Of a stretch of DNA of 64,000 bases, positions 12,276 to 46,466 are shown piece by piece. The DNA is taken from the IMG/VR virus record IMGVR_UViG_3300046660_000488, positions 372,001 through 436,000 of that record, one strand, 5' to 3'. Positions within the stretch are counted from its first letter, which is position 1; every line of letters starts with the position of its first letter. Made by a program: the position numbers and the translations under genes. The notes under the pieces were generated by a model. It did no database searches and had not been told where the DNA came from. It worked only from the letters and a program-made list of their open reading frames with translations.

Positions 12276-14555
12276 TTACACGTTGATAACCACGTTGTCA
12301 TCAACAATCGCGATGTTCGCATCGCCGCCGTTTTCCAGAGAACCGATCACGATCAACTTGGAAAGAGGCTTGGCGACATTGTCGGACAGGACGCGCTTGA
12401 GCGGTCGAGCGCCCATGAGCGGGTCGTAGCCCTTGTCGCCCAGCCAGTCCAAGGCCTCTTGCGTGAACGACAGATTGACGTTTCGCAGGGAGGCCATTTC
12501 CTGAAGCTGGCGAACGAACTTGGCCACGATGTGCAGCATGTTCGCCTTGTCCAGCCTGTCGAAGCGGATGTGGGCGTCCAGACGGTTCATGAACTCCGGG
12601 GTGAAGAACGCCTTGATCGCGGCGGTATCGCCGCCGACGTTCTCTTGCGATCCGAAACCGATCCGGTTCTTGGCCCGATCACGCGCCCCGGCATTCGAGG
12701 TCATGATCAGATGGATGTACCGGCAGTCGATGGTCTTGTTCGACGAGTCGGTGAACGAACCATTGTCCATGATCTGGAGGAAGATGTTCAGGACGTCCGG
12801 GTGAGCTTTCTCGATCTCATCCAGCAGCACCACGCAATGAGGCGTGTCGCTGACGCTCTGGGACAGCAGGCCAGCCTGATCCGAGTAGCCGACATAGCCG
12901 GGAGGGGCGCCGATCAGCCTGCTGACCGTGTGCTTCTCCATGTACTCGGACATGTCGATCCGGATGAGAGGCAGGTTGTAGACGTCCGCGAAGACCTTGG
13001 TGACTTCGGTCTTACCCACGCCGGTCGGGCCGGTGAACAGGTAGGCTCCAGCCGTCTTGTGGTTCTCACGCAGGCCAGCCTTGCTCAGGTAGATCGCGTC
13101 GATCAGGGCGGTGATCGCCGCTTCCTGCCCGAAGACGTTGGCGCGCATCTGCTCGTCGAGACGGATGATGCGTTCCTTGTCGCCCTCGGCCATTTTCTTC
13201 GGCGGGATTTTGGCGATCTGCTCAACTTCGGCCTCGATCTCTTCGACCGTGATCAGACCCTTGCGCTCGACACCTTCCTTCAGGACGTTCTGGGACGCGC
13301 CAGCGCAGTCGATCAGGTCGATGGCCTTGTCGGGCAGGAGCTTGCCGCTGATGTAACGGTGCGACAGGTCAACGGCCGCCACGAGGGCTTCGTCCGTGAA
13401 TTCGACGTTGTGGAAGGTCGAGTAATAGGGCGCGAGGCCGCGCAGGATGTCCTTGGCGTCGTCCAGCGACGGTTCGAACACATCCACCTTGCCGAATCGG
13501 CGAACGAGTGCCGTGTCCTTCTCGAAGTGCTTGTGGAACTCTGACGACGTCGTCGAGCCCATGCAGCGCAGCGTGCCCTTGGCCAGAGCAGGCTTCAGGA
13601 GGTTGGCCGCGTCCATCGTGCCGCTGTTGCCAGCCCCGGCGCCCATGATCATATGGATTTCGTCGATGAACAGGATCGACTTGGGCTTCAGTTCAAGGGC
13701 GTTGATGACTTGCTTCATCCGCTCTTCGAAATCACCGCGATAGCGAGCGCCAGCCACCAGAGCGGCCAGATCAAGCGCATAGACGGTCGAGTCCAGCAGG
13801 ATGGCCGGAACCTCGGAGCGAACGATCTTCAGGGCCAGACCTTCGGCGATGGCCGTCTTGCCAACACCCGGTTCACCCACCAGCAGCGGGTTGTTCTTCG
13901 TCCGGCGGGCGAGGATTTTGACGACGGAGTCCACTTCCTTCGTCCGGCCGATCAGCGGGTCGATGCTCTTGGTGTTGGCCCGCTCATTCAGGTTGACCGT
14001 GTAAAGCGCCAGAATGGAGTCGGCATCAGCTTCGGTCGTCGGCTTGGGCGGCGCCGTGGTCGGCTCGTCACCAGACATGATATGGCGTGCAAGACCGATG
14101 GTCGGCTTCTTGCCGTGCGACATGAAGCGCATCAGGGCCAGCGGATCGACGCCGAACTTTTGCAGGATCACGACCGCGTAACTGTCCTCCATCTTGGAGC
14201 CAGCCAGTTGCAGCAGGACATCCAGAGGGGTGACGTCAGGATCGGTGTGGGCGGCCTTCTTGCCGGTCGCGTTGAACACCAGTTCATTGGCGCGCGGGCT
14301 CGGCTCCGGCTCTTCGTCGCTGGCAGGAATGAGGCCTTCGGAGTAGAACGACTCCAACTCTTCCTGAATGCCCTCGACGTCGATCTTCATCCCTTCAAGG
14401 GCGGAGACCACATCTTCCTGCTCCAGAAGCGACGACAGCAGGTGTTCGAGGGTGATGAAAGCATGTCTGCGTTCGGTGGCGATTCGTCTAGCCCGAAGAA
14501 ACATCGCGGCTGTACGCTCAGTTTGAGCGCTATTCTCAGGCAAATCACTCATCAA
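12276..14555 (-). CDS. clpA: ATP-dependent Clp protease ATP-binding subunit ClpA
   Basis: Two AAA+ modules ([16 protein letters not shown]), [12 protein letters not shown], an IGF ClpP-docking loop and no ClpB middle domain. Confidence 0.95.
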
Positions 14556-14562
14556 AAATACC

Positions 14563-15057
14563 TTATCTACGCAATGTCTTACCTCCCGATCCTTTGGCCC
14601 TCGATAATACGAGGCGGGAGACGAGAGACACGAACGTCACCCCGTTCAGGTGGTCCGTCTCATGAAGGTAGCAGCGTGCGTCGAGATTGGCAAACATTTC
14701 GTTTACCAAATTTCCGGCCGCGTCCTGATAGCGCACCTCGGCGGTGATCGGCCGGGATACCTTCAGGAAAAGGCCGGGGAAGCTCAGGCAACCCTCATCA
14801 TCCTTGGCCTTGGTCTCGGAGACCGACAGGATTTCCGGGTTGAAGACGCCGATCTGGCGGCCGTCGCTCGTCTCCATGACGAACATGCGGTAGGGCAGGT
14901 TGACTTGCGGAGCGGCCAGACCGATGCCGCGCTCGCGCTTCATCGTAGACAGCATTTCGCCCACCAACCATTTCGGGTCGGCGGGCGGATTTTCGAAGTC
15001 GAAGGGAGGGGTGGGCTCCGACAGGATGGGGTGTGAATCGGGTACGAGGGTGAACAT
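14563..15057 (-). CDS. def: peptide deformylase
   Basis: GIGLAAPQV, EGCLSFP, HETDHLNG. Confidence 0.96.
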   Translation of the reverse strand: MFTLVPDSHPILSEPTPPFDFENPPADPKWLVGEMLSTMKRERGIGLAAPQVNLPYRMFVMETSDGRQIGVFNPEILSVSETKAKDDEGCLSFPGLFLKVSRPITAEVRYQDAAGNLVNEMFANLDARCYLHETDHLNGVTFVSLVSRLVLSRAKGSGGKTLRR

Positions 15058-21500: not shown

Positions 21501-23423
21501 ATGCCTTCAGTTGGTAGCAGCCGCGTCAAGACGTCCGGCCGTGGTGAGATCGAGTACTCGCAGGATTCTGCAACAAGCAATGGCGCGACGACCGCTGCTG
21601 TTTCGACCCCTGTTGATGAGCCGATCCTGTCGGTTGTCGGCGAGAACGTCGGTGGTGGCCTTGGCCTCTTCAACGGCGTCAACGGCTCCGACCATGTGGT
21701 CATGGAGTTCAAGACCCTCAAGGCAGGCGCGGGCATCGCGATTGTCAACGACGGTCTGTCCCTGACCATCCGCGCCACCGGCAATGCGACCGGCAACGGC
21801 GGCACGATCATCGGCGACGGCTTCGACATCCAGCTTGGCGACATCGCCAACAAGGGTGACGGCTCGTGGGCGCCGGGCGCCGTGGACCTGACGGACTCGA
21901 CCCCGATGTCCGAAGCCATCGACGAGATCAACGAACTGCTCGGCCTGTTGATCCCCGCAGCCCCGCCCGCTTTCCCCAACGGCACGCTGACGATCATCAA
22001 CACCGCTGGCAACTCGCCGCGTCTGGCCGCTGGCTTCACCAGCCACGTCACGGGTCAGGGCACGCCGGTCGCGGGCGATGCTGTCGCGCGCATCACGACC
22101 ACGGGCGTCAGCACCAACACCCTCAACGACGTCGGCCCGGCTAACCGTGGCAAGATTCAGCTTCTGCTGAACGACGGTTTCGTCGGCGAGCGCACGCTGA
22201 CGGAGAACAGCGACAACGGCAACTACGGCGGCCTGATCATTTCCGACGAGAAGGACTTCCCGGTCGATAAGCCCGGTTTCTGGAAGTCGCTCGACGTTGC
22301 TGGCACGGCCGTCCCGGTCGCCCAAGGCCTCAACAAGGTCCGCATCAACCACACCAACGCTGGCACGACGGCCAACACGCTGTTCGTCCGCGACGACATG
22401 ACGGCTTCGCCGTCCATCCCGACTGGCTCGGTTGCTCTCCAGACGCTGGGTACAGTCGCCTATTCGTCGGGCATCCCGCACTTCGGCCAAGGCGGCGTCC
22501 TGACGGTTGGCGGCTCGATCACCAATCTGGCTGGCCAGACCTACTACGGCGGCAACGATCCGCTGACGATCACCGGCACGAACACGGTCACGACGGCTCA
22601 AGCCTTCAGCTACACTTCGCTCGGCATCACCACCCCGATCCCGGCACAGACGACGTCTGCGACCGCGACGACCGGCGTGGCTGTCAGCATCGACGGCACG
22701 ACCCATTCGTCGGGCGTCATCCAAGCCGTGGCCAAGAACGTCAACGGACAAACGGCTCCGACGACGCTGTCGCAGTCGATCATTCTGGTCAAGCGCGGCG
22801 TCGCCGCCTCGAACCGTCTGGACGAACTGAACGTCCCGGTCATCAATCTGGGCACGGTCCCCAACGCCAATTACGCCACGCGCACTCTGATCGCCGCCAA
22901 CGCCGACCGTCCGGCTGGCGCTACGGCCAACTGGGACGCCACGGCGGCTCTGGCCAGCTACGAAGCCGCAGTCTGGGCTGGCGCTCTGGGTCACTGCCAA
23001 GTCGATTTCACCAGCGGTTACCTGCCGCAGGGTCCGAATTACTCGCAGGGCCGCAGCGGCGCTCAGTACGCGACCTTCACGTTCAACCGCGCCTCGGTCT
23101 CCAATTTCCGCATCAACGTCGTCGGCACGTACGCAGGAGTTTGGGTGAAGCTTCCGGGCGTCTCCGACAACTCGGCGATCTCTCCGAACGCCACGAACGG
23201 CTGGTGGGACGCCACCAAGGCTTACGCCGGTGCTGGTGTCCCCGGCAACTCGTCGGACTCGCTGGCTGGCTGCGTCGTCGGCACGCCGATGGGCGGAACT
23301 TCCGGCGCCTATCAGATCACTTTTGGTCCTCAGTCTTCGACGAACGCGACCTCGAACCAGATCATTGTCCGTATTCGTCTGAACGCTGGGCAAGTCATTA
23401 CTTCGCTCAATTTCTCTAACTAA
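21501..23423 (+). CDS. virion fibre/appendage-associated protein A
   Basis: Late motif at 21470; Gly/Thr/Asn-rich; paralogue of 41334-43148. Confidence 0.7.
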   Translation: MPSVGSSRVKTSGRGEIEYSQDSATSNGATTAAVSTPVDEPILSVVGENVGGGLGLFNGVNGSDHVVMEFKTLKAGAGIAIVNDGLSLTIRATGNATGNGGTIIGDGFDIQLGDIANKGDGSWAPGAVDLTDSTPMSEAIDEINELLGLLIPAAPPAFPNGTLTIINTAGNSPRLAAGFTSHVTGQGTPVAGDAVARITTTGVSTNTLNDVGPANRGKIQLLLNDGFVGERTLTENSDNGNYGGLIISDEKDFPVDKPGFWKSLDVAGTAVPVAQGLNKVRINHTNAGTTANTLFVRDDMTASPSIPTGSVALQTLGTVAYSSGIPHFGQGGVLTVGGSITNLAGQTYYGGNDPLTITGTNTVTTAQAFSYTSLGITTPIPAQTTSATATTGVAVSIDGTTHSSGVIQAVAKNVNGQTAPTTLSQSIILVKRGVAASNRLDELNVPVINLGTVPNANYATRTLIAANADRPAGATANWDATAALASYEAAVWAGALGHCQVDFTSGYLPQGPNYSQGRSGAQYATFTFNRASVSNFRINVVGTYAGVWVKLPGVSDNSAISPNATNGWWDATKAYAGAGVPGNSSDSLAGCVVGTPMGGTSGAYQITFGPQSSTNATSNQIIVRIRLNAGQVITSLNFSN

Positions 23424-41333: not shown

Positions 41334-43148
41334 TTAGTTGCTGAAGCTGAGTGCGGTGATGGCTTGGCCAGCGTTCAGGCGGAAGCGCACGAGGATTTCA
41401 TTCCCCGTTGCCGACGTCGAAGAAGCCGTACCGAAGGTCATTTGGAACGAGCCAGTGGCGCCGCTCATGACCGTACCCGACGCACAGCCAGCGACGGTGT
41501 CGCCAGCTTCACCGGGGATACCGGCGCCGTCATAGGGTGCGAAACCGTTCCACCAAACGCCGCCCAGCGAGTTCGGCTGAGCCGTCGAAACGCCCGGAAG
41601 AGCGATCCAGCAGCCAGCGTACGTGCCGGTGACGTTGATCTTGAACTGCGAGAGAGCCGTACGGGCGAACGAGAACGTCACGTACTGGACTGCATCGCGG
41701 CCCGAGAGGTTCGGACCAACCGGCAGATAACCGGTCGAGTAGTTGGTTTGGTCAGCCTTCAGGATACCGCCGACGACAGCCGCTTCGTGAGCAGCCAGCG
41801 CAGCCGTAGCGTCCCAAGCGACAGTCGAGGCGTTCGGGGTGTTGCCCGTGCCCTTGCTGACGCGGATGGCGTTGTTCGCGTTCGGCGAAGAGCCCAGACC
41901 CGAGACCGGGATGGACAGTTCGTCAACCTTCGAAGCAGCCGCGACGCCGCGCTTGACCAGAACGATGTTGCTGGTCAGGTTCGTTGCCGTGCTGGAGCCG
42001 TTGACGTTTTTGGCGACGGCCGTGAGAGCGCCCATGCCATGCGTCGCGCCGTCCACGTTGATCGTCACCGGCGTGATGGCCGTGGCGGTCGTGGTGTTGG
42101 CGGCGAACGGGGTCGAGAGACCCATGTTCGTGTAGGTGAAGGTCTGCGACGAGATCACCGAGTTGGCGCCCGAGACGACGACCGGGTCAGAACCACCGTA
42201 GTAGGTTTGGCCCGACAGGTTCGACATCGACAGACCAACAGTCAGCGTGCCCGACGTGTTGTAGTGCGGAACCGACGACGAGTAGGCGACCGTACCGGCA
42301 CTGGCCTGAGCCAGCGACGTTGCGGTGATCGCCGGAACGGCCGTGACGTTGTCGCGAACGAGGAAGACATCCGAAGTCGTGCCCGAACCGGTGTGGTTCA
42401 GCTTGATCTTGTTGATGCCGGTGCTCGTGGCGCCGCCAGTGATCTGGATGTCAACCGACTTCCAGAAACCCGGCGTAGCGACCGGGAAGTCTTTCTGATC
42501 GGAAATGACCAGACCCGAGAACGTGCCAGCGTCGCCCGTACCCGTGAGGGTCTTGGAGCCGACGACAGTGCCGTTCAGCAGGAATTGGACCGTGCCCGAA
42601 TTGCCCGGACCCATGTCGTTGAAGACGTTCGAGTTGACGGCAGCGATAGTGCGGGTGACCGCGCTACCAGCCGACAGGCCCGAGCCACCGCCCGAAGCGT
42701 CAGCAGCACCGGTGGCGAGCAGCGGAGTGCTACCCGAGGTGTTGGCGACGGTCAGAGCGTTCGCGTTCGGGAACGACGGCGGCGATGCCGGGACCAGAAG
42801 GCCCAGAATTTCGTTCAGACGGTCAACTGCTTCCGAGACCGGAGTCGCGTCAGACAGTGAGACGGCGCCCGGCGTCCACGAGCCATCGCCATTGACGGCG
42901 ACGTTGCCCAGCGGGACGTGGAAACCGTCGTTAGCAGCAACCGCGTTGGACACGAAGGTCGTAACTTGACCCAGTGTGACAACGTCGGTGTCGCTTACGG
43001 CGTTAGCAGCACGCATAACGGCCAGACCTGCGTCTGCCGCGTTGCGAACTTCGACAACACCACCGTTCACTTTGAGGCGAGGACCCGCCTTACCAAACTG
43101 AACGTTGGTGCCTACGCCTGTAAGCCCAAAGTTTTTAATTTCAGCCAT
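41334..43148 (-). CDS. virion protein A' (N-terminus of D plus body of A)
   Basis: MAEIKNFGLTGVGTNVQFGK as in 28798; GDGSW.PGAV...RLNAGQ.IT.L.FSN as in 21501; late motif at 43176. Confidence 0.75.
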   Translation of the reverse strand: MAEIKNFGLTGVGTNVQFGKAGPRLKVNGGVVEVRNAADAGLAVMRAANAVSDTDVVTLGQVTTFVSNAVAANDGFHVPLGNVAVNGDGSWTPGAVSLSDATPVSEAVDRLNEILGLLVPASPPSFPNANALTVANTSGSTPLLATGAADASGGGSGLSAGSAVTRTIAAVNSNVFNDMGPGNSGTVQFLLNGTVVGSKTLTGTGDAGTFSGLVISDQKDFPVATPGFWKSVDIQITGGATSTGINKIKLNHTGSGTTSDVFLVRDNVTAVPAITATSLAQASAGTVAYSSSVPHYNTSGTLTVGLSMSNLSGQTYYGGSDPVVVSGANSVISSQTFTYTNMGLSTPFAANTTTATAITPVTINVDGATHGMGALTAVAKNVNGSSTATNLTSNIVLVKRGVAAASKVDELSIPVSGLGSSPNANNAIRVSKGTGNTPNASTVAWDATAALAAHEAAVVGGILKADQTNYSTGYLPVGPNLSGRDAVQYVTFSFARTALSQFKINVTGTYAGCWIALPGVSTAQPNSLGGVWWNGFAPYDGAGIPGEAGDTVAGCASGTVMSGATGSFQMTFGTASSTSATGNEILVRFRLNAGQAITALSFSN

Positions 43149-43263: not shown

Positions 43264-43578
43264 CTATTCCAGATACTTTTCGATAATCTCGGAATACTTG
43301 CCATCGAGCTTCATGCAGAACACCAACCAGCCTTTGTTCCAGACTGGACGTGGGTTTTCGGAGATCGTTTCGACGATCTTGGGGAAGTCCTGAAGGATGA
43401 ACAGGACATCGTCGGCCATGGCGATAGCCGAGTTGACAATGTGGTTGGTGTCGATCTGCGCGTCGAAGATGTTCGGGATTTGCCCGACCCAGACCGCCCG
43501 CGCCACAGGCGACATGCTGACGATCTCAGCGCGCATTTCTGCACGCTGAGCAGTCGTCAAATGACCGATCCGGTTCAT
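43264..43578 (-). CDS. hypothetical protein
   Basis: ATGA coupling with the upstream ORF. Confidence 0.6.
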   Translation of the reverse strand: MNRIGHLTTAQRAEMRAEIVSMSPVARAVWVGQIPNIFDAQIDTNHIVNSAIAMADDVLFILQDFPKIVETISENPRPVWNKGWLVFCMKLDGKYSEIIEKYLE

Positions 43579-44381
43579 GCCTTCGGCTTGGCTCTCGACT
43601 TGCGGGGCTTGCGCGGCGCCTTGCCCTGCTCTTCGATCTGGGCCTTCACGGCTTCCATCGCCGCGCAGGCGGCTTCCCATTGGCCGCTTTCGATCAGACG
43701 GCGCTTGGCGTTGGCTGCGGCCTGTTCCATCGTGATCGTCGGCTTGCCGTCTTCGACCGCTTTCTTGGCGGCGGCGTGCTTGTAGTCGAGGGCTTCGTTG
43801 GTCAGGCGGTGCAGACGTTCAGTCGCCTTCGCGTCCAGCATCACTTCGTCCCAGTGGCCGTACTTGGAGTGGCGGCCCATGATATAGCCGAGACCCAGAC
43901 CCAGACGCTTCCAGAAGCCGGTGGCCAGATTGCTCAGGTAGGGCTTCAGGTAGAAATCGCCATCGACTGGGTCGAGCACGAATTTGAACACGTGGTCATC
44001 GCTGTGACATTCGCACTCGAAGTATTCGGTCTTGGTGTCCTCGTCGTCGAACGCCTCGTGGTCCTTGTCGCAGTGGGCAAGGCCAGTGTTGGGATCGGCC
44101 AAGGCGTCAGAGGTGTCGTGCGTCTCCAAAGCCTTGTGGATGGCGATGGTGGCGTCGATGATCGAGGTCTGAAACTCGGGGGTGAGTTCGGTGTAGGCCT
44201 TGTCGCGGATTTGTCCGGCGAGGACTTCCAGCGGAATGGCGGCTTCGACGAGCGCCCGGCGGCCGGAGCGGACTTCAGCGACCAAGAGAAGCATCAGTTG
44301 GGTCATGCCCGTCTCGTCCGGCTCTGACAGCTTGTCGCGGCAGATGCGGTCGAGGTCGTCCAGAAGTTTTTGCGTGAACAT
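43575..44381 (-). CDS. hypothetical protein
   Basis: AGGA RBS; FECECHSDDH...FWKRL...YIMG..SKYGHWDE phage motif. Confidence 0.7.
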   Translation of the reverse strand: MFTQKLLDDLDRICRDKLSEPDETGMTQLMLLLVAEVRSGRRALVEAAIPLEVLAGQIRDKAYTELTPEFQTSIIDATIAIHKALETHDTSDALADPNTGLAHCDKDHEAFDDEDTKTEYFECECHSDDHVFKFVLDPVDGDFYLKPYLSNLATGFWKRLGLGLGYIMGRHSKYGHWDEVMLDAKATERLHRLTNEALDYKHAAAKKAVEDGKPTITMEQAAANAKRRLIESGQWEAACAAMEAVKAQIEEQGKAPRKPRKSRAKPKA

Positions 44382-44400
44382 GAAATGTCCTAAAAAATGA

Positions 44401-44695
44401 AGGGGGAGCTTTCTGTTGACAGGCAAGCCCCGAAGGACCGGCTCCCTAACCCCGGAACCATCACCGCTTACGCGGCGACAGCGTAGTCCATGGCAACGTT
44501 GTCGTTGGCATTTACAATTGTGAACTGATCGTCGGCCGTGTCTTGCCGGATATCTCGCAAACCCTTTACCGCCGCGAATCGATGCTGGTCACCCCCACTT
44601 AGAAACCCATCGCGGACGATGGGCTTGTATGGTGGAGGTGCGGGGAATCGCACCCCGGTCTTCATCGGCTTATTACAGTCTGGTCATCAATATCG
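44401..44695 (-). ncRNA. ssrA: circularly permuted (two-piece) tmRNA with tag ANDNVAMDYAVAA
   Basis: Acceptor piece ends CCGGGG-TGCGATT-CCCCG-CACCTCCACCA at 44630; 33-nt intervening hairpin; coding piece starts GGGGGTGA at 44596; G3.U70 pair; tag stop at 44468. Confidence 0.93.
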
Positions 44696-44730
44696 TCTGT
44701 ATTTAAGCATGGTTTACCAAATGGCACAAG

Positions 44731-45192
44731 CTAAATCGAATTCTCGTCCATTTTGGTGATCCGCTTGGCGGCCAAGGACTTTTTGCGTTCCTTTTCCGAC
44801 TGGTGCGCGCGGTACACAATGCACGGACCCATCCAGCCATATGGCCCCACGAACAGTGCGGTGATCAGCCACCAGTCTTGGTTTTTAACGAACCACGGGA
44901 TGTGGTGCGTGACCGTCAGCATGCCCAGCGTACCGAAGAACACGAGCAGCAGAAAAGTCGGGCCGAACGTGATGATCTCAGACCTGATCCACCGGCGCCG
45001 AGCATCTTGTTCGTCCGGGGTCACCAGCAGACCAAGCTCGTCTTCCAGCATGGCCTGTCGTTCGGCCATCGCGCAGACCTTCTTGAACCAGTGGCGGTCG
45101 TTGATGCCAATGGGGCACGGTCCGGTCTCCGGCGTCCACGAGACGAAATCGGCGACGATCTTCTGAGCCCGGTCGGCCACCACGGGTTTCAT
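44731..45192 (-). CDS. membrane protein
   Basis: Two hydrophobic segments; ATGA overlap with serS. Confidence 0.65.
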   Translation of the reverse strand: MKPVVADRAQKIVADFVSWTPETGPCPIGINDRHWFKKVCAMAERQAMLEDELGLLVTPDEQDARRRWIRSEIITFGPTFLLLVFFGTLGMLTVTHHIPWFVKNQDWWLITALFVGPYGWMGPCIVYRAHQSEKERKKSLAAKRITKMDENSI

Positions 45193-46466
45193 CGGATGAC
45201 TTCCAACCCGTTCATGTAGGGTTGCAGGACGCGGGGCACGCGGATCGAGCCATCCTCGTTCTGGTAATTCTCCATGACGGCGACCAGCGTGCGGCCGACC
45301 GCCAACCCCGAACCGTTGAAGGTCCGCAGGTAACGGTTCTTGCCACCGTCGCTGGGCTTGTAGCGGGCGTTCATCCGCCGGGATTGGAATTGCCCGAAGT
45401 CCGACACGCTCGAAATTTCGCGGTAGGTCTCTTGGCTCGGAATCCAAACCTCGATGTCGATGGTCTTGGCGGCCGAGAAGCCGGTGTCGCCGCCGCACAG
45501 CAGTACCGTGCGGAACGAAAGCTCCAGAGCGCCCAAGATGCCTTGGGCGTTGATCAGGATGAAGTTGTGCTCGTTCGCCGTTGCGCTGTCAGTTATCGAG
45601 ACCAACTCGACCTTGTAGAATTGGTGCTGGCGAATCAGGCCGCGCGTGTCACGTCCGGCCGAACCCGCCTCGGCGCGGAAGCATGGCGTCAGAGCCACGT
45701 AGCGCAGGGGAAGCTGATCCTCGGGGATGATCTTGTCGCGGACAAGGTTGGTGATCGAAACCTCGGCGGTCGGGATCAGCCAGTGATCCGACTCCGGAAT
45801 GTGGAACAGGTCGTCCTTGAATTTTGGAAGCTGGCCGGTCCCGATCAGAGCGTTGGCGTGGACCATCAGCGGAGGATTGACCTCCATGAAGCCGTTCATG
45901 GCGTGGCGGTCGAGCATGAATTGGCCAAGCGCCCGTTCGAGACGCGCCAGCGGACCCTTGGTCACGCAGAACCGGGCGCCGCTCATTTCAGCCGCCGCCT
46001 CGAAATCCATCATGCCGAGATTTTCACCCAGCGTGACGTGGTCCTTGGGTGTGAACGAGAAATTCGGGCGAAGTAATGGGAAGTCAGAGATCACCTTGTT
46101 GTGGCTCTCGTCCACGCCGATGGGCACACCAACGTCCAGCATGTTCGGGATACGCAGCAAGGTTTCTTGAACTTGCTCGTGCAGCTTGCGCTCGTTGGCC
46201 GTGGAATCCGAGAGGAAGCCCTTCAGCGCGGTCATCGACTCAATCGCCCGCTGGCGCTCGATGCCTTGAAGCGTTGGGATGCGGGCAGATTCCTCGTTGC
46301 GCTGCTGAAGCAGGCTTTCGGAATTTTGAATGGCCTTGCGGTGCTGCTGGTCCAGATCGACCAGCGTGTTGATCAGTACCGAAGCTTCGGCGTGGGTCAT
46401 CCCCTTCCGGCCAAGCTCGCTGATGACAGCATGCGGGTTGTCGCGGACGAATTTCAGATCAAGCAT
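45189..46466 (-). CDS. serS: seryl-tRNA synthetase
   Basis: N-terminal coiled coil, LIPTAEV, FRAEAGSAGRDTRGLIRQHQF, EISS, NGSGLAVGR. Confidence 0.97.
   Translation of the reverse strand: MLDLKFVRDNPHAVISELGRKGMTHAEASVLINTLVDLDQQHRKAIQNSESLLQQRNEESARIPTLQGIERQRAIESMTALKGFLSDSTANERKLHEQVQETLLRIPNMLDVGVPIGVDESHNKVISDFPLLRPNFSFTPKDHVTLGENLGMMDFEAAAEMSGARFCVTKGPLARLERALGQFMLDRHAMNGFMEVNPPLMVHANALIGTGQLPKFKDDLFHIPESDHWLIPTAEVSITNLVRDKIIPEDQLPLRYVALTPCFRAEAGSAGRDTRGLIRQHQFYKVELVSITDSATANEHNFILINAQGILGALELSFRTVLLCGGDTGFSAAKTIDIEVWIPSQETYREISSVSDFGQFQSRRMNARYKPSDGGKNRYLRTFNGSGLAVGRTLVAVMENYQNEDGSIRVPRVLQPYMNGLEVIR

What the first reader, a model, noticed from the sequence alone, without database searches (positions are those of the whole stretch)
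44401..44705. Phage-encoded circularly permuted tmRNA under a late promoter, with its own tag
Seen in sequence: on the - strand the order is TAAATA (44700-44705), an acceptor piece ending in ACCA (44630), a 33-nt intervening hairpin CCCATCG..CGATGGG, a coding piece starting GGGGGTG, and the tag ANDNVAMDYAVAA. The acceptor stem has G3.U70. Established: the permuted two-piece form and ANDN...AA tags are typical of Alphaproteobacteria (Caulobacter ANDNFAEEFAVAA), and a terminal AA is the ClpX degron. Inference: the phage supplies ribosome rescue late in infection, and the altered middle of the tag may change adaptor or protease routing. No smpB lies in this window.
Basis: partly seen in the sequence, partly recalled or inferred. 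Interest (0 to 1): 0.75.

Follow-up and report, generated by a model that had tools for sequence, protein, structure and literature searches.

The report
Megaphage-encoded two-piece tmRNA gene
A 578-kb soil phage carries an intact ribosome-rescue RNA (a two-piece tmRNA) with its own tag sequence behind a late-gene promoter motif; this kind of gene is already known in phages, and this copy is a divergent one that the standard detection program misses.

Summary
On the minus strand, 44694-44402 encodes a circularly permuted, alpha-type tmRNA (Rfam tmRNA_permuted 121.7 bits, alpha_tmRNA 114 bits). It has G3.U70, A73 and an encoded CCA ending at 44630. A 33-nt intervening hairpin follows, the coding piece starts at G44596, and the tag is ANDNVAMDYAVAA. 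The record is a complete 578,292-bp phage genome with 69 tRNAs, SerRS, ClpX, ClpP and a ClpA-like protein, and no SmpB or AlaRS.

The gene appears to be under selection. Every modelled helix is kept through compensatory changes relative to Caulobacter. In related soil phages the RNA is about 99% identical while the flank is 86% identical.

TAAATA is the most enriched upstream hexamer in the genome. It precedes portal, tail, baseplate and lysis genes, and a gp55-like late sigma factor is present. It lies exactly 5 nt before the first helix, as in Sinorhizobium phage Phosso. The late-promoter reading is therefore well supported in silico, but not shown.

The tag has Caulobacteraceae-type ends, and its middle matched none of 111 bacterial tags of that pattern.

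Phage two-piece tmRNAs are already published, so this is a new, divergent member of a known kind. Changed adaptor or protease routing remains untested.

The parts
44731..45192 (-). Upstream gene: a 153-aa ORF with hydrophobic segments. Its ATG overlaps the SerRS stop (ATGA) and it ends at TAG 44733-44731, 25 nt before TAAATA.
   Evidence: GC by codon position is 0.57/0.42/0.79, like SerRS at 0.62/0.39/0.80. No Pfam or PHROG match for the longer 255-aa reading.
45192..46466 (-). Seryl-tRNA synthetase gene, two genes upstream of the tmRNA.
   Evidence: TIGR00414 serS 453 bits (cut-off 302). Pfam tRNA-synt_2b and Seryl_tRNA_N.
44711..44719 (-). TGGTAAACC: one copy of a recurrent intergenic motif (consensus aATtTGGTAAACcAAAt), at about -25 to -17 of the predicted start. 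Role unknown (operator or second promoter element).
   Evidence: TGGTAAAC occurs 51 times in the genome against about 11 expected, 38 of them between genes. The core 44719-44708 is unchanged in relatives although 6 nearby bases differ.
44700..44705 (-). TAAATA: a T4-late-type promoter motif. It predicts transcription start at G44694.
   Evidence: Most enriched upstream hexamer. 142 of 180 copies lie in the 20.6% of the genome left uncovered by a crude gene call, with a peak 30-40 nt before start codons. It precedes portal, tail, baseplate, adaptor and endolysin genes. A gp55-like sigma is encoded. Phosso has the same 5-nt spacing to its first helix. The motif is conserved in relatives while position -1 changes T to G.
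44630..44694 (-). Acceptor piece (65 nt). It holds the 5' strands of helices H1-H4 (GAUAU 44694-44690 onward), T stem CGGGG 44657-44653, T loop UGCGAUU 44652-44646, T stem CCCCG 44645-44641, acceptor 3' strand 44640-44634, A73 at 44633 and CCA at 44632-44630.
   Evidence: Rfam alignment with all pairs canonical and the sequence itself.
44597..44629 (-). Intervening segment (33 nt) with a hairpin. It is removed on maturation; U44597 is the -1 base for RNase P.
   Evidence: Fold z = -5.96. Caulobacteraceae intervening segments are 29-30 nt.
44402..44596 (-). Coding piece (about 195 nt). It holds the acceptor 5' strand GGGGGUG 44596-44590, the D-loop analogue ACCAGCAUCGA, the 3' strands of H4-H1, hairpin CGGC/GCCG, the tag frame and the 3' domain.
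   Evidence: Rfam alignments. The 3' end is taken from the end of the alpha_tmRNA match.
44468..44509 (-). Tag reading frame: resume codon GCC at 44509-44507, tag ANDNVAMDYAVAA, stop TAA at 44470-44468.
   Evidence: Read directly. The conserved UAAAU precedes the resume codon, as in Caulobacter. The tag is unique among 111 bacterial tags of this pattern.
44404..44446 (-). 3' domain: helix GGGAGC (44446-44441) / GCUCCC (44409-44404) around the conserved loop CAACAGAA (44418-44411). This phage has an extra inner hairpin here.
   Evidence: The helix covaries with L009 (GCAACC/GGUUGC) and L010 (UGGGC/GCCUA). It matches the conserved 3' end of RF01849.
44392..44397 (-). Run of six T just after the RNA: a probable weak terminator tail. 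The SD AGGA and ATG 44381 of the next gene follow.
   Evidence: Sequence. The fold shows a terminal hairpin followed by CUUCAUUUUUU. The consensus terminator scan does not call it.
43578..44381 (-). Downstream 268-aa ORF of unknown function, possibly reached by read-through.
   Evidence: GC3 0.81. No Pfam or PHROG match. Only one distant relative in IMG/VR.
12279..14555 (-). ClpA-like two-ring AAA+ unfoldase in the same window. It sits in a minus-strand run 294aa-208aa-pdf-clpA that is headed by a TAAATA.
   Evidence: TIGR02639 ClpA 847.5 bits, below the equivalog cut-off of 993. Pfam Clp_N, AAA, AAA_2 and ClpB_D2-small. Promoter position.

Best explanation
This is a functional phage ssrA gene of the circularly permuted alphaproteobacterial type.

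Inferred transcription: it starts at G44694, five bases after a T4-type late promoter motif TAAATA that is read by host RNA polymerase carrying the phage's gp55-like sigma factor. It ends near the T-run at 44397-44392.

Inferred maturation, by analogy with cellular two-piece tmRNAs: the precursor folds so that the acceptor stem closes around a 33-nt hairpin. Host tRNA-processing enzymes remove that segment, RNase P cutting 5' of G44596 and 3' trimming back to the encoded CCA at 44630. This leaves a 65-nt acceptor piece and a coding piece of about 195 nt, held together by helices H1-H4 and the acceptor stem.

Inferred action: host AlaRS charges the RNA through G3.U70 and A73, since the phage has no AlaRS. 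Host SmpB and EF-Tu deliver it to ribosomes stalled on broken or stop-less mRNAs, since the phage has no SmpB. Translation resumes on GCC and adds ANDNVAMDYAVAA. The C-terminal AVAA is the Caulobacteraceae form of the ClpX degron, so tagged products go to ClpXP, either the host's or the phage's own ClpX/ClpP/ClpA-like set.

The likely benefit is keeping ribosomes free during the burst of late protein synthesis, when host RNA supply is failing.

Shown here: the gene's identity, its intact architecture, purifying selection on it, the recurrent promoter motif and its placement, and the absence of SmpB and AlaRS. Inferred: timing of expression, processing, charging, tagging, and the fate of tagged proteins.
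For: Identity: RF04321 scores 121.7 bits and RF01849 114 bits, both full length, and it is the only copy in the genome.

Architecture: G3.U70, A73, encoded CCA, T arm, the D-loop analogue GCAUCGA, UAAAU before the resume codon, and a 13-codon frame ending in TAA.

Selection on structure, relative to C. vibrioides: 4 of 5 pairs in H1 and 3 of 3 in H4 changed on both sides. So did T-stem pair 2 and acceptor pairs 5 and 6. All remain Watson-Crick or G.U. The 3' helix covaries among three viral sequences.

Selection in nature: contigs from other soil metagenomes differ at 2 of 231 bases (44403-44633) and 1 of 151 (44357-44507). The adjacent 44650-45302 differs at 92 of 653.

Not a recent capture: about 62% identity to Caulobacteraceae cores. 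It scores 114 bits, against about 245 for Caulobacteraceae and mostly 160-313 for 121 sampled Alphaproteobacteria.

Phylogeny: it falls in a 100/99-supported clade of viral tmRNAs that sits next to Caulobacteraceae.

Promoter: enrichment and spacing, late-type genes behind the motif, gp55-like sigma at phrog_234 76 bits, E 1e-21, identical TAAATA-N5-G arrangement in Phosso, and the motif core conserved in relatives.

Partners: no SmpB, no AlaRS, no SspB. ClpP, ClpX and ClpA-like are present, and the ClpX and ClpP catalytic or docking motifs are intact: GYVG, IGF and the Ser-His-Asp context.
Against: - No expression data: no RNA run was listed for this sequence, and the phage is uncultured.
- The second stem of pseudoknot PK1 could not be found at 4 bp or more, here or in the nearest relative L010. 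In Caulobacteraceae and Phosso it is a clear 6-bp helix.
- The 5' hairpin of the cellular acceptor piece is missing and the 3' domain is shortened.
- The promoter copy has T at -1, seen in only 5 of 180 TAAATA sites.
- The motif also precedes non-structural genes (RNR, PhoH, Sir2, ClpX), so 'late' is a majority pattern and not a rule.
- The T-run is separated from the last stem by 5 nt and the terminator scan does not call it.
- The viral clade in the tree partly reflects how its members were found, by a 27-nt pattern taken from this gene.
Confidence: 0.75

Rival explanations
1. The RNA works in trans-translation but its purpose is manipulation, not simple rescue. It competes with host tmRNA for SmpB and writes a phage-specific tag. 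Stalled products are then routed differently: they escape the host adaptor SspB, or they are preferred by the phage's own ClpX/ClpA. This could recycle host proteins or spare phage proteins.
For: The tag middle (V5, M7, D8) differs at positions that are invariant in 111 Caulobacteraceae-type tags. A-M-[DE]-Y is shared with viral contig L009, and other phage tags also diverge in the middle while keeping ANDN and xAA. The phage encodes ClpX, ClpP and ClpA-like but no SspB. ClpX and the clpA run carry the same TAAATA motif. The phage ClpX has KRG where E. coli has RKH; the E. coli residues are from memory, the phage ones.
Against: No binding or degradation test was possible. Which tag residues Caulobacter SspB reads could not be retrieved from the held literature. 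Caulobacter and Brevundimonas siphophages carry tmRNAs but gave no ClpX hits, so tmRNA and phage ClpXP are not linked across phages. Tag middles also vary widely among bacteria.
Confidence: 0.15
2. The RNA is expressed early or throughout infection and not specifically late. The start would come from an element tied to the TGGTAAACC motif, or from a sigma-70-type reading (TTGTGC-N17-TTAAAT), and TAAATA would be incidental.
For: TGGTAAACC abuts the TAAATA. It recurs 51 times in the genome and is conserved in relatives. Phage Melnitz places its two-piece ssrA after an early promoter (PMC9004378). Caulobacter phage CcrColossus has a TTGACA-type element upstream of its tmRNA. The cellular ssrA consensus has TATATT at the equivalent place.
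Against: The sigma-70 scan finds no minus-strand promoter here. In relatives TTGTGC and the first T of TTAAAT change while TAAATA does not. The TGGTAAAC motif has no fixed distance to start codons, unlike TAAATA. Phosso keeps TAAATA-N5-G without the TGGTAAACC motif in the shown upstream sequence.
Confidence: 0.2
3. The gene is a decaying passenger picked up from a Caulobacteraceae host, or the remnant of an attachment site in ssrA, with no present function.
For: The low Rfam score relative to cellular copies, the missing 5' hairpin, the shortened 3' domain and the unclear PK1. Temperate phages often integrate in ssrA and carry fragments of it (PMC9004378).
Against: Both pieces, all tRNA-domain helices and the tag frame are intact, with many compensatory changes. 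The RNA is about 99% conserved where the flank is 86%. It is only about 62% identical to any host copy, so it is not an attachment-site duplicate. Related tmRNAs persist in several phage lineages.
Confidence: 0.04

Closest known systems
Caulobacter crescentus / Caulobacteraceae two-piece tmRNA (Rfam RF01849 alpha_tmRNA; Keiler, Shapiro and Williams 2000, cited in PMC9004378 and PMC8119881)
   Same: Permuted gene order (acceptor piece, about 30-nt intervening hairpin, coding piece). G3.U70/A73/CCA. T loop UGCGAUU. The GCAUCGA element. UAAAU before the resume codon. A 13-residue tag ANDN..[FY]AVAA. The conserved CAACAGAA 3' loop.
   Different: About 62% core identity and 114 against about 245 bits. 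No 5' hairpin on the acceptor piece, a shorter 3' domain, and no evident PK1 second stem. Tag residues 5, 7 and 8 differ. A phage late-type promoter replaces the cellular one. It sits in a virus with no smpB.
Two-piece ssrA of marine T4-like myophages (OM43 phage Melnitz and pelagimyophages; Buchholz et al. 2022, PMC9004378)
   Same: An alphaproteobacterial-type permuted tmRNA carried by a T4-superfamily myophage. The same open question of rescue versus tagging of host proteins. That paper already counted 53 two-piece forms among 133 unique phage tmRNAs.
   Different: There the gene follows an early promoter and a glutamine riboswitch, in 140-kb marine phages detected by ARAGORN. Here it follows a late-type motif in a 578-kb rhizosphere phage, and ARAGORN fails.
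tmRNAs of Caulobacter/Brevundimonas jumbo siphophages (CcrBL9, CcrColossus, vB_BpoS-Kabachok; Dolichocephalovirinae)
   Same: Same viral tmRNA clade in the tree for CcrBL9 (100/99). Permuted form and the same probable host family. Unannotated in the GenBank records.
   Different: They lie inside the tRNA cluster between tRNA-Cys and tRNA-Met. They have longer intervening segments (36-89 nt) and longer tags ending in LAA, and some have a GUC resume codon. The phages are unrelated siphoviruses with no ClpX hit.
tmRNA of Sinorhizobium jumbo phage Phosso (PV764938), the nearest cultured relative by portal (47.5%) and ClpX (59.5%)
   Same: TAAATA exactly 5 nt before the G that opens the first helix. 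The tag begins ANDNV. Unannotated. The phage also encodes ClpX.
   Different: A 410-nt intervening segment and the tag ANDNVSTKVALAA. It branches elsewhere in the tree on a long branch. Its relative Atu_ph07 has no tmRNA match.
tmRNA plus SmpB of huge phages (Al-Shayeb et al. 2020, PMC7162821)
   Same: A very large phage genome rich in translation genes, including a tmRNA.
   Different: That survey reports SmpB as well and used ARAGORN only. This genome has no SmpB and that method would have missed its tmRNA.
Mycobacteriophage tmRNAs (Bxz1 group) and the DS6A tRNA-like-domain-only form (Hudson et al. 2014, PMC4131195)
   Same: Phage-borne ssrA without smpB.
   Different: Those are one-piece forms. 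DS6A lacks a tag frame and inhibits tmRNA, whereas this gene has a complete, conserved tag frame.

Membership tests
tmRNA, circularly permuted alphaproteobacterial form (Rfam RF04321 / RF01849) | Scores above the curated gathering threshold of the family covariance model over its full length | tested here: met
   RF04321 121.7 bits against 47; RF01849 114 bits against 50; model positions 1-213 and 1-355 (repeated on the whole genome).
tmRNA, circularly permuted alphaproteobacterial form (Rfam RF04321 / RF01849) | tRNA-Ala-like acceptor: 7-bp stem with G3.U70, discriminator A73, 3' CCA | tested here: met
   GGGGGUG (44596-44590) pairs with CACCUCC (44640-44634); position 3 is G.U; ACCA lies at 44633-44630.
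tmRNA, circularly permuted alphaproteobacterial form (Rfam RF04321 / RF01849) | Permuted order: the 3' half of the tRNA domain, ending in CCA, lies upstream of the 5' half, with a removable intervening segment | tested here: met
   Acceptor piece 44694-44630, intervening 44629-44597, coding piece from 44596.
tmRNA, circularly permuted alphaproteobacterial form (Rfam RF04321 / RF01849) | T arm and helices H1-H4 (P2 region) joining the two pieces | tested here: met
   All pairs canonical in the tmRNA_permuted alignment. Compensatory changes against C. vibrioides.
tmRNA, circularly permuted alphaproteobacterial form (Rfam RF04321 / RF01849) | Short tag reading frame with no start codon, an Ala resume codon, a tag ending in a hydrophobic xAA, and a stop | tested here: met
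   GCC resume codon, ANDNVAMDYAVAA, TAA.
tmRNA, circularly permuted alphaproteobacterial form (Rfam RF04321 / RF01849) | Pseudoknot PK1 between the P2 region and the resume codon | tested here: inconclusive
   The first stem CGGC/GCCG is present. No second stem of 4 bp or more runs from its loop; only GAC/GUU is possible, which becomes GAU/GUC in L010. Caulobacteraceae and Phosso have a clear 6-bp second stem.
tmRNA, circularly permuted alphaproteobacterial form (Rfam RF04321 / RF01849) | Works with SmpB | not testable with these tools
   There is no SmpB gene in the phage, so host SmpB would be needed. Binding was not tested.
tmRNA, circularly permuted alphaproteobacterial form (Rfam RF04321 / RF01849) | Processed into two base-paired RNAs, alanylated, and adds the tag in vivo | not testable with these tools
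   No RNA run was listed and the phage is uncultured.
T4-type late promoter (TATAAATA at -10, read by gp55-bound host RNA polymerase) | A conserved A/T-rich -10 motif resembling TATAAATA, with no -35, recurring before late genes at a fixed short distance | tested here: met
   The consensus is [C/A]TAAATA[C]. 142 of 180 copies are intergenic, with a peak 30-40 nt before starts and no conserved upstream positions. It precedes portal, tail, baseplate hub, tail fibre, adaptor, virion protein and endolysin genes, and also some non-structural genes.
T4-type late promoter (TATAAATA at -10, read by gp55-bound host RNA polymerase) | The phage encodes a gp55-family late sigma factor | tested here: met
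   phrog_234 (late sigma transcription factor) 76.2 bits, E 9.8e-22 at G000:C1:301797-302096. T4 gp55 itself matches at E 3e-6.
T4-type late promoter (TATAAATA at -10, read by gp55-bound host RNA polymerase) | This particular copy fits the genome's consensus | tested here: inconclusive
   The hexamer and the following C fit. Position -1 is T, seen in 5 of 180 copies, and relatives have G there.
T4-type late promoter (TATAAATA at -10, read by gp55-bound host RNA polymerase) | gp33 co-activator and sliding-clamp dependence; late timing of the transcript | not tested
   I did not search for gp33 or gp45 homologues, and there is no transcript data.

The most novel reading that the evidence does not exclude
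The tmRNA is one arm of a phage-run tag-and-destroy programme. Late in infection the phage would co-express its own tmRNA, ClpX and a ClpA-like unfoldase from the same promoter type. These would act with its ClpP and two amber-suppressor tRNA(CUA) genes. The suppressors would push ribosomes through host TAG stops into stop-less stalls. The phage tmRNA would then mark those products with a tag whose phage-specific middle (A-M-[DE]-Y, shared with another viral contig) favours the phage's Clp machines over the host SspB route. Host protein would be turned into amino acids and ribosomes freed for virion synthesis.
Probability: 0.08. Interest if true: 0.75.

Novelty: new member of a known kind. Interest (0 to 1): 0.38.

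Why it matters
As a class this is already known, so the value lies in the details.

1. A megaphage with 69 tRNAs, SerRS, peptide deformylase and its own ClpXP/ClpA also carries a selected tmRNA but no SmpB. That marks which parts of ribosome rescue a phage must bring and which it can borrow from the host.
2. The gene is wired to the phage's own late-type promoter so that the primary transcript would begin exactly at the first helix. A distant relative shares this arrangement. It is a clear example of a host-type RNA gene re-plumbed into a viral programme, and it gives a precise 5'-end prediction to test.
3. The tag keeps host-family ends but has a phage-specific middle. This offers a natural test of which tag residues matter for adaptor and protease choice in Alphaproteobacteria.
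4. ARAGORN, the tool used in published phage tmRNA surveys, misses this gene and several others. The GenBank records of CcrBL9, CcrColossus, Kabachok and Phosso leave theirs unannotated. Phage tmRNAs are therefore probably undercounted.

Tried and rejected
- ARAGORN on the window, on the whole genome and on a 1.3-kb excerpt found no tmRNA. I rejected this as evidence of absence because Rfam is unambiguous and ARAGORN also missed Phosso, L005-L007 and a Brevundimonas chromosomal copy.
- Megablast of 3.5 kb against phage records gave no match. Distant blastn found only about 30-nt T-arm matches.
- A search for relatives through the downstream ORF gave one weak locus. The portal search gave no relative above about 50% identity, so no syntenic orthologue could be compared.
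I worked round this through genome handles.
- The sigma-70 and terminator consensus scans found nothing on the minus strand at the gene.
- RNA sequencing runs: none was listed.
- A PK1 second stem was not found.
- MAFFT columns for the outer helices H1/H2 were misaligned across distant sequences. For those helices I relied on the Rfam alignments.
- TAG recoding: a first test suggested a large excess of in-frame TAG. I rejected it as a shadow-frame artefact of a high-GC3 genome. A cleaner test of what follows terminal stops shows the standard code.
- I considered the gene as an ssrA attachment-site remnant and rejected that, because the gene is complete and only about 62% identical to host copies.
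- The primary papers on Caulobacter two-piece tmRNA and on the SspB orthologue's tag recognition are not held. Which tag residues SspB reads is therefore left open.
- I did not run complex prediction. A 13-residue peptide or an RNA partner gets no verdict from that tool.
Full report
**What is there**

Reading the minus strand of 44850-44250 confirms each item in the finding.
- TAAATA lies at 44705-44700.
- A tRNA-like 3' half ends in ACCA at 44630.
- A 33-nt intervening segment (44629-44597) holds the hairpin CCCAUCG/CGAUGGG.
- A second piece begins with GGGGGUG at 44596.
- A frame from GCC (44509) to TAA (44470-44468) reads ANDNVAMDYAVAA.

Pairing GGGGGUG with CACCUCC gives a 7-bp acceptor stem with G.U at position 3, followed by A73 and CCA.

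Rfam places the locus in tmRNA_permuted (121.7 bits, E 3e-23) and alpha_tmRNA (114 bits, E 2.5e-30). Both matches are full length, and no non-canonical pair is flagged in the tmRNA_permuted alignment. The acceptor stem plus intervening hairpin folds far better than shuffles (z = -5.96). ARAGORN reports nothing, which is a false negative.

**Where it is**

The window is bases 372001-436000 of a 578,292-bp virus record with direct terminal repeats, rated complete. The genome is 59% G+C and ARAGORN finds 69 tRNA genes. The source is a rhizosphere metagenome.

The portal and ClpX are nearest to Sinorhizobium phage Phosso and Agrobacterium phage Atu_ph07, at 47-60% identity, within the T4 superfamily. 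Two tail proteins, at 21501-23420 and 41337-43148, belong to phrog_8578. The second was searched and is about 60% identical to proteins of Caulobacter and Brevundimonas jumbo phages. No closer relative is in IMG/VR; the best portal identity is about 50%.

The local gene order on the minus strand is as follows.
- Seryl-tRNA synthetase, 46466-45192.
- A 153-aa ORF, 45192-44731.
- The tmRNA.
- A 268-aa ORF of unknown function starting at ATG 44381.

The genome has no SmpB, no AlaRS and no SspB. It does encode the following.
- ClpP (NF001368, 290 bits).
- ClpX (NF003745, 553 bits, with zinc finger, GYVG and IGF motifs).
- A ClpA-like protein in this window (TIGR02639, 847.5 bits, below the equivalog cut-off).
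- Peptide deformylase.

**Evidence that it is a working gene**

Four lines of evidence argue against a relic.

1. Structure is kept by compensation. I compared the Rfam alignments of the phage and of C. vibrioides. Four of five pairs in the outer helix H1, all three pairs of H4, T-stem pair 2 and acceptor pairs 5 and 6 differ on both sides, and all still pair.
2. The 3' helix GGGAGC/GCUCCC around the conserved CAACAGAA loop is replaced by GCAACC/GGUUGC and by UGGGC/GCCUA in two viral relatives.
3. Natural variation shows purifying selection. Contigs from other soil metagenomes cover 44403-44633 with 2 differences and 44357-44507 with 1 difference. The neighbouring 44650-45302 carries 92 differences in 653 bases.
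4. It is old. Identity to Caulobacteraceae tmRNA cores is only about 62%. Its alpha_tmRNA score of 114 bits lies below nearly all of 121 sampled Alphaproteobacteria, which score mostly 160-313, with Caulobacteraceae at about 245. One of those 121 genomes, G043, is unpublished. It is a single point in that distribution and nothing rests on it.

Weak points remain. The second stem of pseudoknot PK1 is not evident. The 5' hairpin of the cellular acceptor piece is absent, and the 3' domain is shortened.

**Origin**

I built a tree of 52 tmRNA cores with 194 columns. The phage RNA falls with CcrBL9 and four IMG/VR sequences in a clade with 100/99 support. That clade together with Caulobacteraceae is split from other Alphaproteobacteria at 99/99. 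Phosso's tmRNA branches elsewhere on a long branch.

There is a caveat. The viral sequences were retrieved with a 27-nt pattern from this gene's T arm and acceptor, which favours their grouping.

Permuted tmRNAs are also present in CcrColossus and in Brevundimonas phage Kabachok. There they lie between tRNA-Cys and tRNA-Met. Atu_ph07 has none. In all four GenBank records I examined (CcrBL9, CcrColossus, Kabachok, Phosso) the gene is unannotated.

**The tag**

I scanned one genome for each of 185,579 species for ANDNxAx[DE][FY]AVAA. This gave 111 hits, almost all labelled Caulobacter, Brevundimonas or Caulobacteraceae. Every one reads ANDNFA[EGQS]E[FY]AVAA.

The phage tag therefore has the family's length, its ANDN start and its YAVAA end, which points to a Caulobacteraceae host. 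It is unique at positions 5, 7 and 8.

Other phage tags show the same pattern of conserved ends and a divergent middle.
- ANDNVSTKVALAA in Phosso.
- VNDTYAMEYALAA in L009.
- ANDNSMMETRLAA in L010.
- Longer LAA-ending tags in the Caulobacter and Brevundimonas siphophages.

The terminal xAA is the ClpX degron, from established knowledge. Whether the middle changes adaptor binding could not be tested, and the papers defining SspB contacts in Caulobacter are not held.

**The promoter**

TAAATA is the most enriched hexamer upstream of genes in this genome.
- It has 180 copies on both strands.
- 142 of them lie in the 20.6% of the genome left uncovered by a crude gene call.
- There is a sharp peak 30-40 nt before start codons.
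- No upstream positions are conserved except position -1, where C is seen 94 times, A 57, G 24 and T 5.

Of 20 genes behind well-placed copies, those with a known function are mostly virion or lysis genes. They include portal, baseplate hub, tail fibre, head-tail adaptor, three virion proteins, a second tail protein and an endolysin. ClpX, RNR, PhoH and Sir2 are also in the set. The tail gene at 43148 has a copy 33 nt upstream.

The genome encodes a gp55-family late sigma factor. In T4 the late motif TATAAATA is centred at -10, as cited in PMC9004378. Applying the same spacing puts +1 at G44694, the first base of helix H1. Phosso shows the identical arrangement, TAAATA-N5-G, at its own first helix.

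In diverged relatives six bases between 44706 and 44726 differ, including the -1 T, which becomes G. TAAATA and the adjacent TGGTAAACCAUG are untouched.

This adds up to good indirect support for a late-type promoter that starts the RNA at its mature 5' end. The reservations are the rare T at -1, the non-structural genes that share the motif, and the adjoining TGGTAAACC element. That element has 51 copies against about 11 expected, and its role is unknown.

**How it most likely works**

See Best explanation. In short:
- late transcription starts at G44694;
- host tRNA-processing enzymes cut the precursor into two base-paired pieces, which is the general route for permuted tmRNAs (PMC11915505);
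- host AlaRS charges the RNA and host SmpB delivers it;
- the added tag ends in AVAA and directs products to ClpXP, either the host's or the phage's.

Only the sequence-level steps are shown. The rest is inference.

**Comparison with what is known**

Phage tmRNAs are established.
- Mycobacteriophages and phage G carry them (PMC4131195).
- Huge phages carry tmRNA together with SmpB (PMC7162821).
- A 2025 database holds 79 unique phage sequences (PMC11915505).
- 53 two-piece forms have been counted among 133 unique phage tmRNAs, including Melnitz, where the gene follows an early promoter and a riboswitch (PMC9004378).
- Clp genes in Atu_ph07-like phages, and a tmRNA in Sinorhizobium phage AP-J-162, are published.

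This locus is therefore a new and divergent member of a known kind. Four features are particular to it: the late-promoter wiring, the host-like but unique tag, its company (ClpX/ClpP/ClpA-like, SerRS, 69 tRNAs, no SmpB), and its invisibility to ARAGORN.

**Verdict**

I score interest at 0.38.

Noticed in passing
G000:C1:109999-110155 (outside the window), minus strand: Two tandem tRNA genes with anticodon CUA (amber suppressors; ARAGORN labels them Pyl). The genome nevertheless appears to use the standard code. Sequence after terminal TAG codons is short and not coding-like, and TAG ends 109 of 692 crude gene calls.
   Followed up: partly
window 44711-44719 and about 50 other sites genome-wide: A recurrent intergenic motif aATtTGGTAAACcAAAt with palindromic arms. 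TGGTAAAC occurs 51 times against about 11 expected, 38 times between genes, with no fixed distance to start codons. It is probably a binding site for a phage regulator or a second promoter class.
   Followed up: partly
window 12279-14555 (-), 14566-15057 (-); G000:C1:87027-88289 (-); G000:C1:77760-78353 (-): The phage encodes a ClpA-like unfoldase next to a peptide deformylase, a full ClpX (zinc finger, GYVG, IGF; KRG in place of the usual RKH loop) and a ClpP with catalytic residues in place. ClpX and the pdf-clpA run are headed by TAAATA; ClpP is not.
   Followed up: partly
window 21501-23420 (+) and 41337-43148 (-): Two paralogous tail proteins of phrog_8578, each behind a TAAATA. The second was searched and is about 60% identical to proteins of Caulobacter and Brevundimonas jumbo siphophages, although the portal and ClpX are of the Atu_ph07/Phosso myovirus type. 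This suggests exchange of host-recognition genes between unrelated phages of one host group.
   Followed up: partly
L002 2475-2780; L271 (JX100810 132369-132662); L272 (ON529852 194435-194690); L152 1501-2103 (PV764938 349596-350198): Permuted tmRNA genes are present but unannotated in the GenBank records of Caulobacter phages CcrBL9 and CcrColossus, Brevundimonas phage Kabachok and Sinorhizobium phage Phosso. In the three siphophages they sit between tRNA-Cys and tRNA-Met.
   Followed up: yes
L152 about 1642-2050 (Phosso): The Phosso tmRNA gene has a 410-nt intervening segment between CCA and the coding piece, against 5-60 nt in most bacteria sampled. I did not examine whether it holds an ORF or a mobile element.
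   Followed up: no
L271, L272, L009: Several phage tmRNAs seem to resume on GUC (Val) and not on an Ala codon: CcrColossus VNDND.., Kabachok VEAHNDNF.., L009 VNDTY... The resume position is inferred from the conserved UAAAUG/ACUG context only.
   Followed up: no
G000:C1:301206-302186 (+): A 326-aa ORF holds a gp55-like late sigma region (phrog_234, 76 bits). It is much longer than T4 gp55 (185 aa), so it may carry extra domains.
   Followed up: no
L235 (Brevundimonas chromosome) and several viral loci: ARAGORN 1.2.41 with -m fails on a normal chromosomal Brevundimonas permuted tmRNA that scores 246 bits in Rfam. It also fails on this phage, Phosso and L005-L007. Surveys that rely on it undercount permuted tmRNAs.
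   Followed up: partly
window 45192-46466 (-): A full-length seryl-tRNA synthetase (TIGR00414, 453 bits) is translationally coupled (ATGA overlap) to a small membrane-like ORF just upstream of the tmRNA.
   Followed up: partly
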